The notes beneath the pieces were generated by a model. It was given only the letters and a program-made list of their open reading frames with translations, was not told the DNA's origin and ran no database searches. Below are positions 13,676-18,576 of a stretch of 64,000 bases of DNA, one piece after another. A program made the position numbers and the translations under genes. The first letter of the stretch is position 1. Each line of letters starts with the position of its first letter. Origin of the DNA: Adineta vaga (lineage: Eukaryota > Animalia > Rotifera); the NCBI GenBank assembly GCA_021613535.1, contig CP075495.1, positions 14,198,001 to 14,262,000 on the forward strand. Reading direction: 5' to 3'.

Positions 13676-16600
13676 TTAAGATTTATTGAAAGCTTCCGAT
13701 GGAATCATTTTCTAAATAGAAAAATAAATAAATATTTCACATTTGATCAATAACAAAAAGTCTTAGTTTACCTTTTGATGTGCATCTAGAAAATTTTCTG
13801 CTGCTTTATCATAATTCCAATTATTTTCTTGTAAACATCTGTAGAACAAAGTCAGAAGAGTCTTGAATTATGACTTGTCAAAGTAGAACTTACAATTTTG
13901 AATATGCTATATTCATTCCTGATTCTTGTGAAAATTTCAGTACCATTTGATTTTCAATATCGCCATTAGAATTGGTTGGTTGAGATGTAGTAGACACTGT
14001 TGATGTTGGTGTTGGACGAGTCATACTCTGAATAAAGAATAAAAGAATTTATTTTTGTTTTGGTATATAAGTCTGAACTTTCTACATACCGAAATTTGAG
14101 CATCAGTTGCATTTGTTATCATGATATGATCAGCAATAATCAATACACTATGAAAGAAATTTTTTTTCTGAAATTAAAAGTCATAAATAGAAAATTTGTA
14201 TGCTTACCCAGCAGTTGTTTGTGCACAAGTAAATGTACGTTGAAAACATCGTACAGGACTATTAGCATTTTGATCGACTAATAAATGACATAGTCATAAA
14301 TAAGATTTTTATTCGAAAACGACACTTACCTTCTCGATACAGGCCACTCACTGTAAAAATAGCTCGATTATTCTACAAAACAGATTGAATTGTATTGTAA
14401 AAAGTAGAAAGAAACATTTTCATAACTTACTGCTGTTGAAATAACATCAACATGAAATGAATTTCCATCATGTTTTGTTAGTGGAAATTTCGTTCTTAGA
14501 AATTCCAATATTGTCGATTTTCCATGTCGTAATAACATCATTCGTCGTTTATCATCAAAAACTTTTTGTAAATTTCTTGATTCACTGATAAATGTACCAA
14601 ATTTAAATTGTCGCGTAGGAACAATCGAACCATCCACTGATGAAATACATAATGAAAACATACATAAATCATGATAACAAGCTTGTAATTCTTCTCGTCC
14701 ACGTGTATCGAATAATCGATAGTATTCATCGATAAATTTAGCAAGAAATCCTTGCATATCATGTGGAACACAATGTGGTACTGATGCTGGCAAAGTTATT
14801 GTTTCAATATCAGTTGCAAAACGAATCGTTGGTGGTAGATCAACATTATCCTTGGTTAGAAAAAGAAAAGACAAAAACATGAAGAAATTGTTTGAAAAGT
14901 TCAATGTTTAACTTACAATCCGTTTGAGTTGTGGTAATTTCTGACGTATAGTACTAGAATGTGAGGAGATGGACCAATTGAATAGATGCTTATTGTACAA
15001 TACAACTGAAAAGATAGACACACAAACAACAGCAGCAACAAATGATCGTCTCGCTTGGAATGCGACACTTACACACGTCTAAATCGAATGTTTTCGATTC
15101 TGAAATCATTCCATTCTCAATCAATTCTTCCTCACTGTTAGAAGATACTAATGAATCTTATTTTTTTCCTCTATGGTTAATGAGATCGTCTGTTACATTT
15201 TACAATCATTCACTTTCTCTGATTACAAATACAAAAAACTTCTTTTCTTTTTTGAATTGTCCAAATATTGTTGCCATTTAAGTGGTTTATATGAAGGGTA
15301 TTATTTTTTGTAATCGGATGTCTTTAATTAATATATTTTTTGTCATCAAAATAAATCCTATTTAAAATAGGAATAAAACTGATTTCATATAATGAATCAG
15401 CTGATCAACAGATCAGAATTTGAATGATAAATTTCTTAGTTGTTGTAATATTTCGACATCCGTTTTTATTTAGAGTGAGTAGGAGATGAGGAAAATCACT
15501 CTATTTATTCGCCGTTGATTGATTGTGAAGAAAATTTTATCGACGTACAAAAAACTTCATAATAATTACAATAAAATCAAGAAATTTTTCATATAATTAT
15601 CTTTTTTTCTCTCACTCCCATGAATTTTTGTTGTACAACACACTCTCACTTGGAATGTAACTAGACGATCTCAGTTTTTCGTAGTTTCATTTTTTTTGTT
15701 TTCATCTAATTCAGTGAAGTTGAATGAAAAATAGAGAATAAAATTCACTGAAAACATTCGATTTACGAACATGTAGATATGTTTTGTCTTTGTCTGTTGT
15801 GAATGTCTGTGGAAAAAAAAGATTCTTTAGATCTGACCTTATAATATCGTCCATTGAAGAAGTATTGCGTTTGTTACTTGATAAAGTTAATGGATTGTTT
15901 TTAATAAATAGATGATCAAGATGAGGTAATTGTTTAAGATTATCAAAATCATCAACATTTTTTAACTAAAAAATAAATTAATTTGAATAACTTTTCATTT
16001 TATAAAAAAAATATATAACCAACTTGATTTGAAGCAATACTAAGAAGTACAAGATCATTCAAACGAAGATTACGAAATTCATGTAAATTGACGATATTAT
16101 TTGAACCCAAATCAAGTTGACGTGTCTATGGTGGAAATAATTAGATATTGAAGAACAAAAGAATTAGAAATACAAACCATATGAAGATCTTTATTAACGA
16201 TATCGACGACTTCACGTATGAATGCATGTTTATTGAATTGAGGAAATATTCCGAGAGAACTTAGTTCTAAAAAGAAAATTCATATCAAATATCGAGAAAC
16301 AAAGGAATGATAATGTTCAATTTCTGTTTTTTCAAAAATTGACAGTTCTTACCTTCATCATCTGCTAAATTTGTTAAATCTAATTTGAAAATTTGTTGAT
16401 CAAACCGACGATTAATTAGATAATCCTAAAGAAATAATAATTGTAAACATATAACTACGTATTTTATTTTCAATTATCTACTTTAAAATGTGGTCGTATA
16501 TCTTCATCTAATGATGGTATAGGTGCAGGTACTCGACTAATAAGAATACGAAGCTATAAAAACAAAAGATATTCAATATTTTCTTCATTATTTAATTCTA

Positions 16601-17720: not shown

Positions 17721-18576
17721 ATGAAACGACAATTCAATTCGTCATCACCACCTTCGTCACCGTTTTCCAATTCACAAATTTCGGATGAACTTGAACCTGT
17801 ACCAAAACGACCTCGTATTTTTGTTTCTTCACCAACACCACCGCCAGATCCTATCGACGATGACAACGAAGAAGAAGAAGAAATTATTGTTGATGAACCT
17901 ATTATTCCGTCTGTAAATATTACCGAAGAGAAGTGAGAACATGTTCTATGAATAAAAAAACACACACAAGTTCTAAATTTTTTAATATTTCAGTTTAAAT
18001 GAAGAACAAGATGATGACAACGATATTATTGAAATTGAACAACAATATGATAATGGAGTTATTATTGTTTCGGATTCTGATACAGACGATGATCTAGGAA
18101 TTGATGTTACGGACGATATTATTCCATCGATATCTTCTTTAATTAATGAATCTATAGCGTCGCCTACTAGTACTGATGTTGAAATTGTTCATGAAGAAGT
18201 AGCTTTAATGGACGATGATGACGAAGAAGAACAGCAGCAGCAGCAAGAAATGGCTGATCAGGAATCTCTTGATATTATATCAGATGATAATGAGAATAAT
18301 GAATTAATCGATTTGACAGATGACGAACCACCTTCTATTATTTCTTCTTCCGTTTTACTTGAACGTAAATTATCAACTGATGTTCAACAATGTCCCATTT
18401 GTCTCGAAACACTATCACATTTACAACGCACAGGTATTTATTTAATAATCACTCCATGTCGTCATGTCATGTGTACATTATGCAGTCGGCAATTATTGGC
18501 AACTTCATCGCGATGTCCTCTATGTCGAGAAAATGTCACTTCAACAACATTATTGCCATACTGTATTCTTACCTGA
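17721..18576 (+). CDS. RNF4-like SUMO-targeted ubiquitin ligase; exons 17721-17932 and 17994-18576
   Basis: Several SIM-like motifs in acidic context (IIVDE, DIIEIE, VIIVSDSD, LDIISDD, ELIDLTDDE), NLS PKRPR, C-terminal C3HC4 RING CPIC...CRHVMCTLC...CPLC. Confidence 0.8.

What the first reader, a model, noticed from the sequence alone, without database searches (positions are those of the whole stretch)
15016..15808. Strand-specific nested long-range RNA rod inside the NXF1 intron with a CTE-like AAGACA
Seen, in nested order on the minus (mRNA) strand: AGACAU 15808-15803 with GUGUCU 15021-15016; ACAACAG 15800-15794 with CUGUUGU 15032-15026; ACAUGUU 15774-15768 with GACGUGU 15079-15073; perfect 16 bp UAAAUCGAAUGUUUUC 15765-15750 with 15095-15080; AUUUUAUUCUC 15744-15734 with GAGAAUGGAAU 15118-15108; CUUCACUG 15719-15712 with CAGUGAGG 15137-15130; UGAGAUCGUCU(A)GUUACAUU 15673-15654 with 15199-15181. 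The six non-Watson-Crick positions in these stems are all G-U on the transcribed strand (A-C on the other), which argues for selection at RNA level. AAGACA (15790-15785), the NXF1-contacting loop motif of CTEs, lies unpaired next to the outer stem. Inference: a lineage-specific CTE-like export/retention element that also brings the intron ends together.
Basis: partly seen in the sequence, partly recalled or inferred. Interest (0 to 1): 0.85.

Follow-up and report, generated by a model that had tools for sequence, protein, structure and literature searches.

The report
Conserved folded retained intron in NXF1
The one long intron of the mRNA-export gene NXF1 in the rotifer Adineta vaga folds into a long-range RNA rod that is conserved with compensating base changes across bdelloid rotifers, and the intron is left unspliced in a large share of transcripts, so it looks like a rotifer version of the self-regulated retained intron known from vertebrate NXF1, although its "AAGACA" motif is not conserved.

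Summary
Observation confirmed. All seven nested stems, the perfect 16-bp helix, the six G-U pairs and AAGACA sit at the stated coordinates. The arms match far better than shuffles.

- **Not a MITE:** the arms, the loop and the whole element are single-copy in the 100.8-Mb genome (Adineta vaga).
- **Conserved:** the same 0.65-1.06-kb intron, with the same blocks, is found in both NXF1 ohnologs of Adineta and Rotaria and in five environmental contigs (16 sequences). Of 58 curated pairs, 88.8% of cells are canonical and 22 pairs show compensatory changes. No species permutation (0 of 1000) reached this, and slid-partner controls fell far below it.
- **Neutral control:** the neighbouring short intron is not alignable.
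- **Retained in RNA:** transcript contigs from three studies show the 884-nt splice (14953|15838) and also an unspliced form spanning both junctions at similar depth. All short introns have zero depth.
- **Position:** the intron precedes the conserved 37-nt exon, as vertebrate intron 10 (the CTE intron) does.

Not supported:
- AAGACA occurs in 2 of 17 sequences, varies in one RNA run, and is mostly paired in the MFE.
- The G-U strand bias is weak once counted without selection.
- The real 3' splice site is 14954, not about 15007.

Verdict: a new, sequence-unrelated variant of the NXF1 retained-intron element. NXF1 binding is untested. The scan noted this intron (s1-502076) and its ohnolog's (s1-502360) before.

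The parts
15838..15965 (-). NXF1 exon 7 (128 nt, end of the LRR domain), immediately upstream of the long intron
   Evidence: RNA joints 15965|16024 and 14953|15838. The translation LKNVDDFDNLKQLPHLDHLFIKNNPL... reads as an LRR.
14954..15837 (-). Intron 7 of 13, 884 nt, GT..AG. It is the retained 'cassette' intron. All other introns of the gene are 52-86 nt.
   Evidence: The joint 'skips 884' is seen in runs X1, X2 and X5. An unspliced contig spans 14926-15867 in X1 and X2.
15830..15837 (-). 5' splice site GUCAGAUC, invariant in all 16 bdelloid introns. The C at +3 and A at +6 depart from the GURAGU consensus.
   Evidence: Alignments A2 and A3, invariant columns 1-8.
15803..15808 (-). P1, 5' strand (AGACAU). 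[quoted passage not shown]
   Evidence: Conserved: 86 of 96 cells are paired, with 21 G-U against 2 A-C.
15016..15021 (-). P1, 3' strand (GUGUCU), 62 nt upstream of the real 3' splice site
15794..15800 (-). P2, 5' strand (ACAACAG). It pairs with 15026-15032.
   Evidence: The core CAACAG/CUGUUG is conserved, but the register slips in the GYU repeats of other species.
15026..15032 (-). P2, 3' strand (CUGUUGU)
15785..15790 (-). It is not conserved, and its GACA is paired in the predicted fold.
   Evidence: (15788 C>A on the plus strand in X1).
15750..15765 (-). P3, 5' strand (UAAAUCGAAUGUUUUC), the perfect 16-bp helix with 15080-15095. It is the best-supported helix.
   Evidence: 214 of 234 cells are paired and 7 pairs show compensatory types, for example U-A in 9 sequences and C-G in 4.
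15080..15095 (-). P3, 3' strand (GAAAACAUUCGAUUUA)
15712..15774 (-). They are real in A. vaga, but poorly conserved or re-registered in other species.
   Evidence: Cross-species pairing is 41 of 77, 38 of 121 and 50 of 88 cells in a gappy region.
15073..15137 (-).
15654..15673 (-). P6/P7, 5' strand (UGAGAUCGUCU-A-GUUACAUU). It pairs with 15181-15199 and forms the innermost part of the rod.
   Evidence: P6: 154 of 176 cells paired and 7 compensatory pairs. P7: 64 of 76 cells and 2 compensatory pairs.
15181..15199 (-). P6/P7, 3' strand (AAUGUAACAGACGAUCUCA)
15625..15638 (-). Box A, degenerate in this copy (UUGUACAACAAAAA). It reads UUGUACGUCGAAAA in 14 of 16 sequences.
15535..15550 (-). Box B (UUGUACGUCGAUAAAA), near-invariant in all sequences. 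It contains a 5'-splice-site-like GUACGU. Boxes A and B can pair with each other (helix H3).
   Evidence: In the whole genome the motif matches exactly only in the ohnolog's intron (2 hits) plus one chance-level hit.
15455..15462 (-). H4, 5' strand (CGGAUGUC). It pairs with 15315-15322 and closes a central domain of about 130 nt.
   Evidence: RNAalifold helix. 109 of 112 cells are paired and 3 pairs are compensatory, for example G-C in 12 sequences and A-U in 4.
15315..15322 (-). H4, 3' strand (GACAUCCG). It overlaps the second AAGACA of the intron (15324-15319).
14992..15012 (-). Conserved acceptor-like UUUUCAG (15012-15006), running into hairpin H5 GUUGUAUUGUACAAU (15006-14992). It is not used as an acceptor in the RNA contigs.
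   Evidence: H5: 86 of 90 cells paired, C-G changing to U-A or U-G. No joint at 15006.
14954..14980 (-). Conserved 3' terminal block (CAAUUGGUCCAUCU...CAUUCUAG) with the real 3' splice site
14917..14953 (-). Exon 8, the conserved 37-nt micro-exon (..S|TIRQKLPQLKRI|D..)
   Evidence: RNA joints. It is 37 nt in all bdelloids, in Didymodactylos and in the Logan relative.
14431..14850 (-). Exon 9, start of the NTF2-like domain. It was used alone as the protein query.
   Evidence: Matches human NXF1 chains 4wyk and 6e5u at E = 5e-15. Orthologs carry the Pfam domains Tap-RNA_bind, LRR_NXF1-5, NXF_NTF2 and TAP_C.

Best explanation
The feature is a conserved cis-acting RNA structure inside the regulated, retained 'cassette' intron (intron 7) of NXF1 in the bdelloid rotifer Adineta vaga.

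**Anatomy.** On the pre-mRNA, nested long-range helices (P1, P2, P3, P6, P7) zip the 884-nt intron into a rod. As a result, the invariant and rather weak 5' splice site (GUCAGAUC, 29 nt from P1) and the 3' splice region (62 nt from P1) lie about 90 nt apart. That is the size of the gene's normal introns. The rod carries an inner domain made of the H4 stem, the twin near-invariant UUGUACGUCGAAAA boxes, and a conserved acceptor-like UUUUCAG followed by a hairpin.

**Outcome.** The transcript ends up in one of two forms. One is spliced and encodes full-length NXF1. The other keeps the intron, reads into a stop after 42 intron-coded residues, and would encode a protein of about 368 aa holding only the N-terminus, RBD and LRR. 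This is the same architecture as the vertebrate 356-aa short Nxf1.

**Shown:** the structure, its conservation and covariation, its single-copy status, its position, and the two RNA forms.

**Inferred:** that the fold sets the balance between splicing and retention (zipper plus regulatory inner domain), and that the retained RNA has a function. Whether NXF1 itself reads the element is open.
For: - **Gene identity.** The gene is NXF1 and the organism is A. vaga.
- **Intron bounds and splicing.** The joint 14953|15838 has GT..AG ends in three studies.
- **Specific retention.** One contig covers 14926-15867 (the whole intron plus both junctions) at depth 47, against 29-33 for the spliced junction and 70-87 for the exons in X1 and X2. 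In X5 the figures are 3.2 and 4.0. Bins that contain short introns have exactly exon-only depth, so this is neither DNA contamination nor general pre-mRNA.
- **Single copy.**
- **Same intron and blocks elsewhere.** Found in A. ricciae, A. steineri, four Rotaria species, both ohnologs, and five complete environmental contigs.
- **Covariation.** RNAalifold gives 49 pairs, 16 of them compensatory. With 11 sequences, 561 of 621 cells are canonical and 22 pairs are compensatory, against 31-42% and 3-8 pairs when partners are slid. No permutation reached the observed value, either overall or within ohnolog clades (0 of 1000 each). With 16 sequences, 779 of 877 cells are canonical, again with 0 of 1000 permutations.
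- **Independent folds.** The rod is predicted separately in all 11 introns, with 109-142 long-range base pairs.
- **Neutral control.** The neighbouring short intron aligns at z = -0.9 to 3.9, against z = 4-23 for the ends of the long intron.
- **Not coding.** Read-through tails run 4-111 aa and are not conserved.
- **Positional fit to zipper stems.** Linkers of 29 nt plus about 48 nt fall inside the 42-85 nt window defined for yeast zipper stems (PMC12350175).
- **Parallel with the vertebrate short isoform.** PMC5170612.
Against: - No experiment links the fold to splicing or retention.
- Contig depths are a rough measure of isoform ratio. The libraries' poly(A) status and the cellular compartment of the retained RNA are unknown.
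- In run X6 the intron contig is only about 5% of the 3'-exon depth, and that library looks 3'-biased.
- Didymodactylos carnosus keeps a 1038-nt intron and the 37-nt exon, but shows no recognisable blocks or rod. The element is therefore not universal in bdelloids.
- Thermodynamics distinguishes the two strands only weakly.
Confidence: 0.6

Rival explanations
1. One reading: the rod and its flanks form a CTE-type element. NXF1 (with NXT1) binds it directly, with AAGACA as the contact loop, and exports the intron-retaining mRNA so that a short NXF1 is translated.
For: - The intron is homologous in position to the vertebrate intron that holds the CTE, and it is retained at a high level.
- An AGACA core lies beside P2 in 11 of 17 sequences.
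- The boxes contain a 5'-splice-site-like GUACGU, which recalls the conserved 5'-splice-site-like sequence next to the vertebrate CTE loop (PMC4338338).
- The retained RNA is abundant despite a premature stop, as in mammals.
Against: - AAGACA itself occurs in 2 of 17 sequences, reads AAUACA in run X1, is mostly paired in the MFE and centroid, and is not enriched.
- No Rfam family matches.
- Published BLAST searches found no CTE homolog in invertebrate model organisms.
- The vertebrate core is a 53-nt stem-loop, not a rod of about 0.9 kb.
- Binding was not tested.
Confidence: 0.2
2. The rod is a purely constitutive splicing aid. It exists only so that an unusually long intron can be spliced by machinery tuned to introns of about 55 nt. 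On this reading, retention is just slow splicing with no function.
For: - The geometry fits zipper stems.
- All other introns of the gene are 52-86 nt.
- The tail peptide of the retained form is not conserved.
Against: - This does not explain why a compact genome keeps a 0.65-1.06-kb intron at this one site in both ohnologs and all sampled Adineta and Rotaria.
- It does not explain the near-invariant inner boxes, H4, the pseudo-acceptor plus hairpin, or the invariant weak 5' splice site.
- The same intron is a regulated retained intron in vertebrates and Drosophila.
Confidence: 0.15
3. The conserved sequence is an independent non-coding RNA gene (snoRNA, miRNA or lncRNA) hosted in the intron.
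For: Conserved intronic blocks are often hosted small RNAs.
Against: - No Rfam match at E <= 10 beyond noise.
- Conservation spans the whole intron, including both splice-site flanks.
- The RNA contig is continuous with both exons at uniform depth.
Confidence: 0.03
4. The arms are the terminal inverted repeats of a decayed MITE or foldback transposon, or arose by chance complementarity.
For: The arms are imperfect inverted repeats of about 190 nt around a loop of about 450 nt. The 16-mer has 81 near-matches in the genome, against 7 for the reversed control.
Against: - No second copy of the arms, the loop or the whole element exists in the genome.
- The 16-mer near-matches do not extend beyond about 18-20 nt.
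- The element lies at the orthologous position in all species and in both ohnologs, with compensatory changes.
- The arm alignment is about 6 sd above shuffles.
Confidence: 0.02

Closest known systems
Vertebrate NXF1 intron-10 constitutive transport element (and the MPMV CTE)
   Same: - Same gene, and the same intron by position: just upstream of the 37-nt exon, after the LRR domain.
- The intron is retained in a sizeable share of RNA.
- Retention gives a premature stop and a predicted short RBD+LRR protein (368 aa here, 356 aa in human; PMC5170612).
- The intronic sequence is conserved far above neutral, and a 5'-splice-site-like motif lies inside the conserved part (PMC4338338).
   Different: - No detectable sequence relation.
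- The conserved unit is a multi-helix rod of about 0.65-1 kb that spans nearly the whole intron, not a 53-nt stem-loop.
- AAGACA is not conserved.
- NXF1 binding and export are untested here.
Drosophila sbr (Dm nxf1) intron-containing transcript
   Same: An invertebrate NXF1 ortholog with an abundant transcript that keeps the analogous intron (Ivankova 2010, as cited in PMC8151460).
   Different: It is a different phylum with unrelated intron sequence. To my knowledge no covariation-supported end-to-end rod has been shown there. The 110/37-nt 'cassette intron' description by Mamon and co-workers is recalled from memory and was not found in the library.
Intron zipper stems and conserved long-range intronic pairings (yeast RPS17B-type stems, PMC12350175; Drosophila, PMC2724269; human PCCRs, PMC8052449)
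   Same: Complementary segments near the 5' splice site and near the branch/3' region shorten the effective intron. The linker lengths here (29 nt plus about 48 nt) fit the yeast definition.
   Different: - It is far longer and built of several helices.
- Its sequence is strongly conserved, whereas yeast zipper stems are only 20-30% conserved.
- It carries invariant inner boxes.
- It sits in an intron that is retained rather than efficiently removed.
Detained or retained introns with autoregulatory 'poison' outcomes
   Same: A single intron is selectively left in an otherwise fully spliced transcript, which introduces a premature stop.
   Different: In this case a specific conserved RNA fold accompanies the retention. 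The fate of the RNA (NMD, nuclear detention or translation) is unknown.

Membership tests
MPMV/NXF1 constitutive transport element (CTE) | Lies in the NXF1 intron that is retained (vertebrate intron 10, after the LRR domain and before the NTF2-like domain) | tested here: met
   The intron ends 12 1/3 codons (the 37-nt exon) before the residues that align to human ..GHELPPP... Human exon 10 ends at about aa 338, since the 356-aa short form has 18 intron-coded residues. This is consistent within about 2 residues. The human numbering is inferred from the PDB construct.
MPMV/NXF1 constitutive transport element (CTE) | Primary-sequence and structure homology to the 53-nt CTE core | not testable with these tools
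No Rfam family matched. Published BLAST searches found none in C. elegans or Drosophila.
MPMV/NXF1 constitutive transport element (CTE) | Conserved internal loop carrying AAGACA | tested here: not met
   AAGACA occurs in 2 of 17 sequences and is GAGACA, GAAACA, other or deleted elsewhere. Run X1 reads AAUACA. GACA is paired in the MFE and centroid. The hexamer is not enriched.
MPMV/NXF1 constitutive transport element (CTE) | Direct binding by NXF1 RRM-LRR (with NXT1) and export of unspliced RNA | not testable with these tools
   Needs EMSA or CLIP and a reporter assay.
NXF1 retained 'cassette' intron (vertebrates, Drosophila) | The intron is kept in a substantial fraction of otherwise fully spliced transcripts | tested here: met
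   The unspliced contig 14926-15867 has depth 47, against 29-33 for the spliced joint. The short introns have depth 0. Seen in three studies.
NXF1 retained 'cassette' intron (vertebrates, Drosophila) | Retention truncates the protein after the LRR domain, giving a short RBD+LRR isoform | tested here: met
   An in-frame stop follows 42 intron codons. Exons 1-7 total 980 nt, which gives about 368 aa by arithmetic.
NXF1 retained 'cassette' intron (vertebrates, Drosophila) | Lineage-wide conservation of intronic sequence | tested here: met
MITE / foldback transposon | Multiple dispersed copies sharing the terminal inverted repeats | tested here: not met
   Single copy by BLAST of the whole element, the arms and the loop. 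The core patterns are at control level or do not extend.
MITE / foldback transposon | Insertion polymorphism (absent from orthologous sites) | tested here: not met
   The element is present at the orthologous site in all Adineta and Rotaria copies and in both ohnologs.
Intron zipper stem | [quoted passage not shown] | tested here: met
   [quoted passage not shown] Its 3' strand ends 62 nt before the AG, which is about 48 nt before the likely branch region. The branch point itself is inferred.
Intron zipper stem | The stem promotes splicing | not testable with these tools
   Needs mutate-and-rescue experiments.

The most novel reading that the evidence does not exclude
The bdelloid intron RNA is a genuine NXF1-recognised autoregulatory element that is unrelated in sequence and architecture to the vertebrate CTE. 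It would be a kilobase-scale rod presenting twin UUGUACGUCGAAAA boxes (possibly U1-binding decoy 5' splice sites) and an AGACA-containing junction. If so, NXF1 reading its own retained intron would be an ancestral bilaterian circuit whose RNA part has been reinvented lineage by lineage.
Probability: 0.2. Interest if true: 0.85.

Novelty: new variant of a known kind. Interest (0 to 1): 0.62.

Why it matters
Self-regulation of NXF1 through a retained intron that holds a CTE has been shown only in vertebrates. Sequence searches failed to find the element in invertebrate model organisms, and in Drosophila only the retained transcript is known. This report finds the positionally homologous intron in a distant animal group (Gnathifera). 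There it is kept about 15 times longer than its neighbours in a compact genome. It is retained in roughly half of the transcripts in two studies. It carries a large RNA fold with clear covariation in both ancient gene copies. That makes the question [quoted passage not shown] directly testable. It also supplies a well-defined RNA, with helices, invariant boxes and natural compensatory variants, for binding, probing and splicing experiments.

Tried and rejected
- **MITE/TIR origin.** Rejected: BLAST of the whole element, the left arm and the loop each find only the element itself. The 19-mer core is at control level. The 16-mer has 81 near-matches against 7 for the control, but none extends beyond about 18-20 nt.
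- **Known RNA family.** Rfam at E <= 10 gave only noise.
The 6:0 count is real, but it comes from selected stems. An unbiased arm alignment gives 9:5. Across species the count is 35:23 (11 sequences) and 55:32 (16 sequences). Several of the A-C cells come from P2 or R. socialis misalignment. This is suggestive only.
- **Sense versus antisense stability.** The sense strand is better in 8 of 11 introns, by a mean of about 7 kcal/mol. This is not decisive. A larger shuffle-based z-score run timed out.
No RNA joint is seen there.
- **Coding explanation.** Read-through tails are 4-111 aa and shift frame between species.
- **Genome-wide role of the box motif.** It is found only in the ohnolog's intron plus one chance-level hit.
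- **Deeper relatives.**
  - Didymodactylos keeps the long intron but not the blocks.
  - An acanthocephalan NXF-like gene is intronless.
  - An unnamed Logan relative has a 274-nt intron.
- **Metagenome pattern scan.** Of the 12 hits, 6 were unrelated tandem repeats.
- **PDB search with exon 7 alone.** It gave only generic LRR noise.
- **The count of structure pairs.** It was not used, because the 1210-character structure string would have had to be typed. The same counts and controls were computed in Python instead.
- **Spliced model.** Exons were searched one at a time by reference.
Full report
**1. The observation.** They include the perfect 16-bp helix 15765-15750/15095-15080 and the 20/19-nt helix with one bulged A. 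The only non-Watson-Crick positions are six G-U pairs. The complementarity is well beyond chance. A local alignment of the left arm against the reverse complement of the right arm scores 74, against 36.7 +/- 5.8 for 300 dinucleotide shuffles (maximum 61). The 826-nt stretch folds to -189.3 kcal/mol (z = -5.8) with the nested rod as its backbone.

Three details need correcting.
- The plus strand folds into the same rod nearly as well (-184.8 kcal/mol, z = -4.7). In the unbiased arm alignment, transitions split 9:5 rather than 6:0.
- In the MFE and the centroid, the GACA of AAGACA is paired, as GACAAA 15788-15783 with UUUGUU 15042-15037.

**2. Gene, organism and exact intron.** The gene on the minus strand (about 17185 to 13830) is an NXF1 ortholog.
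- Exon 9 alone matches human NXF1 chains at E = 5e-15.
- Full-length relatives carry the Pfam domains Tap-RNA_bind, LRR_NXF1-5, NXF_NTF2 and TAP_C.
- Source names for the near-identical proteins, together with the genome of 100.8 Mb in six contigs, identify Adineta vaga, a bdelloid rotifer.

Exons were searched singly by reference.

Transcript contigs from four public runs (three studies) show every one of the 13 introns as a GT..AG joint. The long intron is 15837-14954 (884 nt). It lies between a 128-nt exon and a 37-nt micro-exon (14953-14917). All other introns are 52-86 nt.

The 37-nt exon and the residues around it (..IIS|TIRQKLPQLKRI|DNVDLPP..) place this intron 12 1/3 codons before the start of the NTF2-like region, which aligns to human ..GHELPPP... 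Human short Nxf1 has 356 aa, of which 18 are intron-coded, so human exon 10 ends near residue 338 (PMC5170612). This intron is therefore the positional counterpart of vertebrate intron 10, the CTE intron, within about two residues of numbering uncertainty.

**3. It is not a transposon.** BLAST of the whole element, of the left arm and of the 456-nt loop against the complete genome returns only the element itself. The 19-nt core of the inner stem has no excess of near-matches (8, against 6 for the control). The 16-mer does have 81 near-matches, against 7 for the reversed control. None of the 28 loci examined extends beyond about 18-20 nt, so this excess is compositional and these are not copies.

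**4. It is conserved, with covariation.** Using exon 9 as the protein query, I fetched NXF1 loci from A. ricciae, A. steineri, Rotaria sordida, R. socialis, R. magnacalcarata and R. sp. Silwood1. I also fetched the second A. vaga copy on contig 5, which is the ancient ohnolog.

Every copy has a 794-1059-nt intron at this position. Each begins with an invariant GUCAGAUC and ends with ...CAUUCUAG before a 37-nt exon.

The introns align in blocks:
- P1/P2: GGACAUUCACAACAGAC with CUGUUG..GUGUGUCU
- P3: UAAAUCGAAYGUUU with AAACRUUCGAUUUA
- P6/P7: the inner stems
- two near-invariant UUGUACGUCGAAAA boxes
- H4: GGAUGUC/GACAUCC
- UUUUCAG followed by the hairpin GUUGCAUUGUGCAAC
- the 3' terminal block

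RNAalifold recovers P3, P6, H3 (box A with box B), H4 and H5. It gives 49 pairs, of which 16 have compensatory changes. Examples are U-A in 6 sequences and C-G in 4 in P3, A-U in 6 and G-C in 4 in P6, and G-C in 7 and A-U in 4 in H4. From the alignment rows, each of these states is scattered across both ohnolog clades, so each needs at least two independent double substitutions.

Stems 3, 5 and 6 are specific to A. vaga or change register in other species.

| Measure | 11 sequences, 59 curated pairs | 16 sequences, 58 curated pairs |
|---|---|---|
| Canonical cells | 561 of 621 (90.3%) | 779 of 877 (88.8%) |
| Pairs with compensatory types | 22 | 22 |
| Slid-partner control, canonical cells | 31-42% | 30-44% |
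| Slid-partner control, compensatory pairs | 3-8 | 7-12 |
| Species permutations reaching the observed value | 0 of 1000 (maximum 88.2%) | 0 of 1000 (maximum 86.6%) |
| Within-ohnolog-clade permutations reaching it | 0 of 1000 (maximum 89.4%) | not run |

The extra sequences came from a metagenome scan with the twin-box pattern. It returned six further bdelloid NXF1 introns, five of them complete, plus six unrelated tandem repeats.

Folded independently, each of the 11 introns forms 109-142 long-range base pairs between its first 350 and last 360 nt.

As a neutral control, the short intron immediately downstream is not alignable between the same species (z = -0.9 to 3.9). The two ends of the long intron align at z = 4-23. 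The read-through peptide varies from 4 to 111 residues and shifts frame between species, so coding does not explain the conservation.

There is a limit to the conservation. Didymodactylos carnosus, from the third bdelloid order, keeps a 1038-nt intron and the 37-nt exon, but shows no recognisable blocks or rod.

**5. The intron is retained in RNA.** In runs X1 and X2, a single contig covers 14926-15867, which is the whole intron plus 28-30 nt of each flanking exon. Its depth is 47. The spliced junction contig has depth 29-33 and the exons 70-87. In X5 the figures are 3.2, 4.0 and about 7.

In each case the depths of the two forms add up to about the exon depth. That suggests roughly 60% retention in X1/X2 and 45% in X5. 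Contig depth is a crude measure, so these are order-of-magnitude statements.

Bins that include short introns have exactly the depth expected from their exon bases alone. For example, 37.0 equals 69.5 x 66/124. This rules out genomic DNA and general unspliced RNA, so the retention is specific to this intron. Run X6 shows the intron at about 5% of the 3'-exon depth, but it covers only the 3' end of the gene.

The retained form reads from exon 7 into 42 intron codons and then a stop. Exons 1-7 total 980 nt, so the predicted product is about 368 aa with the N-terminus, RBD and LRR only. This is the same design as mammalian short Nxf1.

**6. The CTE-specific claim.** AAGACA does not behave as a selected motif.
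- At the aligned position, other sequences read GAGACA, GAAACA, other variants or a deletion. Only A. vaga C2 and one environmental contig have AAGACA, although an AGACA core is present in 11 of 17.
- The retained-intron contig of run X1 carries C>A at 15788 on the plus strand, which makes the motif AAUACA.
- Four of its six bases are paired in the predicted fold.
- The hexamer occurs 42 times in the window, fewer than in shuffles.
- Rfam has no match.

I had no trusted reference CTE sequence, so homology to the 53-nt core could not be tested. Published BLAST searches found none in invertebrate models (PMC4338338). Membership in the CTE family is therefore not supported. Function like a CTE remains possible but untested.

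**7. How it most likely works.**

Shown: a conserved multi-helix fold that closes the intron from 29 nt after the 5' splice site to 62 nt before the 3' splice site, and two stable RNA outcomes.

Inferred: in a genome whose spliceosome normally handles introns of about 55-85 nt, the rod reduces the effective intron to about 90 nt. The linkers (29 nt plus about 48 nt to the likely branch region) fall in the window that defines yeast zipper stems (PMC12350175).

Several features look like the regulatory part that holds back or redirects splicing:
- the invariant, sub-consensus 5' splice site;
- the twin boxes, which contain GUACGU, a sequence used as a real 5' splice site in the same gene in A. 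ricciae and R. magnacalcarata;
- the conserved acceptor-like UUUUCAG with its hairpin;
- the H4 domain.

The box motif occurs nowhere else in the genome except the ohnolog's intron and one chance-level hit. It is therefore a private signal of NXF1 and not a general element.

I put about 0.6 on 'structure-controlled retention of the ancestral NXF1 cassette intron'. I put about 0.2 on the stronger reading that NXF1 itself binds and exports this RNA, about 0.15 on a purely constitutive splicing aid, and very little on a hosted ncRNA or a transposon.

**8. Strand.** The RNA evidence shows that the sense strand is transcribed and carries the intron. G-U against A-C cells in the curated helices are 35:23 (11 sequences) and 55:32 (16 sequences). 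P1 alone is 21:2, and many of the A-C cells come from register slippage in P2. The sense fold is more stable than the antisense fold in 8 of 11 introns. This fits an RNA-level, sense-strand structure, but it is much weaker evidence than the covariation itself.

**9. Novelty.** Already known:
- retention of this NXF1 intron and a cis element inside it in vertebrates;
- an intron-containing sbr transcript in Drosophila;
- long-range intronic pairings and zipper stems as general phenomena.

I found no paper on rotifer NXF1.

New here:
- a covariation-supported, kilobase-scale fold, unrelated in sequence to the CTE, in the homologous intron of a distant phylum;
- its preservation in both ohnologs;
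- direct RNA evidence of high, intron-specific retention.

This is a new variant of a known kind. The scan's first readers had already flagged this intron (s1-502076) and the ohnolog's (s1-502360) as a retained cassette intron. I tested the first claim fully. Of the second I tested only the sequence conservation.

Noticed in passing
window 18208-18576 (+); L042 1483-2413: A RING-finger gene (CPICLE...CPLC) lies head-to-head upstream of NXF1. A zf-RING gene and then a WD40 gene also flank the Rotaria sordida ortholog, so local synteny is conserved across bdelloid genera.
   Followed up: partly
G000-wide; window 15080-15095: The 16-mer TAAATCGAATGTTTTC has 81 matches with at most one mismatch in the genome, against 7 for its reversed control. 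None extends beyond about 18-20 nt. Some cluster (for example three within 22 kb on C5 near 10.52 Mb). The excess is probably compositional or a common coding word, but it is unexplained.
   Followed up: partly
L046 541-1406 (G000:C5 ~6059959-6060824): The second A. vaga NXF1 copy (70% identical in exon 9) keeps an 866-nt version of the same intron, with both boxes intact. In the window copy, box A is degenerate. Whether that copy is retained in RNA was not tested.
   Followed up: partly
L060 2021-3058: Didymodactylos carnosus NXF1 has a 1038-nt intron and the 37-nt exon at the same site, but a different 5' splice site (GUGGGA) and no recognisable conserved blocks. Its next intron is also long (about 580 nt).
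   Followed up: partly
L061 301-1929: The NXF-like gene of the acanthocephalan Neoechinorhynchus agilis is a single uninterrupted ORF (542 aa) with no introns and no TAP_C hit on record.
   Followed up: no
L044 1240-1513: An unnamed relative from a Logan assembly (60% identical in exon 9, richer in G+C) keeps the 37-nt exon behind a 274-nt intron. The ends of that intron pair in the MFE, and it contains several GUCGAAA-like words.
   Followed up: partly
window 15221, 15618, 15748, 15788, 15812-15814: The retained-intron contigs of runs X1 and X2 differ from the assembly, and from each other, at a few intron positions. These are allelic or strain variants. None shows the T>C (plus-strand) pattern that A-to-I editing of this minus-strand RNA would give.
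   Followed up: partly
L073 ~430-640 (WBZQ01000892.1); also L062, L066, L067, L069, L072: The twin-box pattern also hit unrelated tandem direct repeats in metagenome contigs. One example is an array with a unit of about 37 nt containing GTATTGTACGTCGAAACCCCAGTTTCGACA downstream of a G+C-rich ORF. They have no relation to NXF1.
   Followed up: no
L047 vs L048: Two A. steineri assemblies encode the identical NXF1 protein, but the intron is 1149 nt in one (with an N run) and 927 nt in the other. This is probably an assembly gap rather than a real insertion.
   Followed up: no
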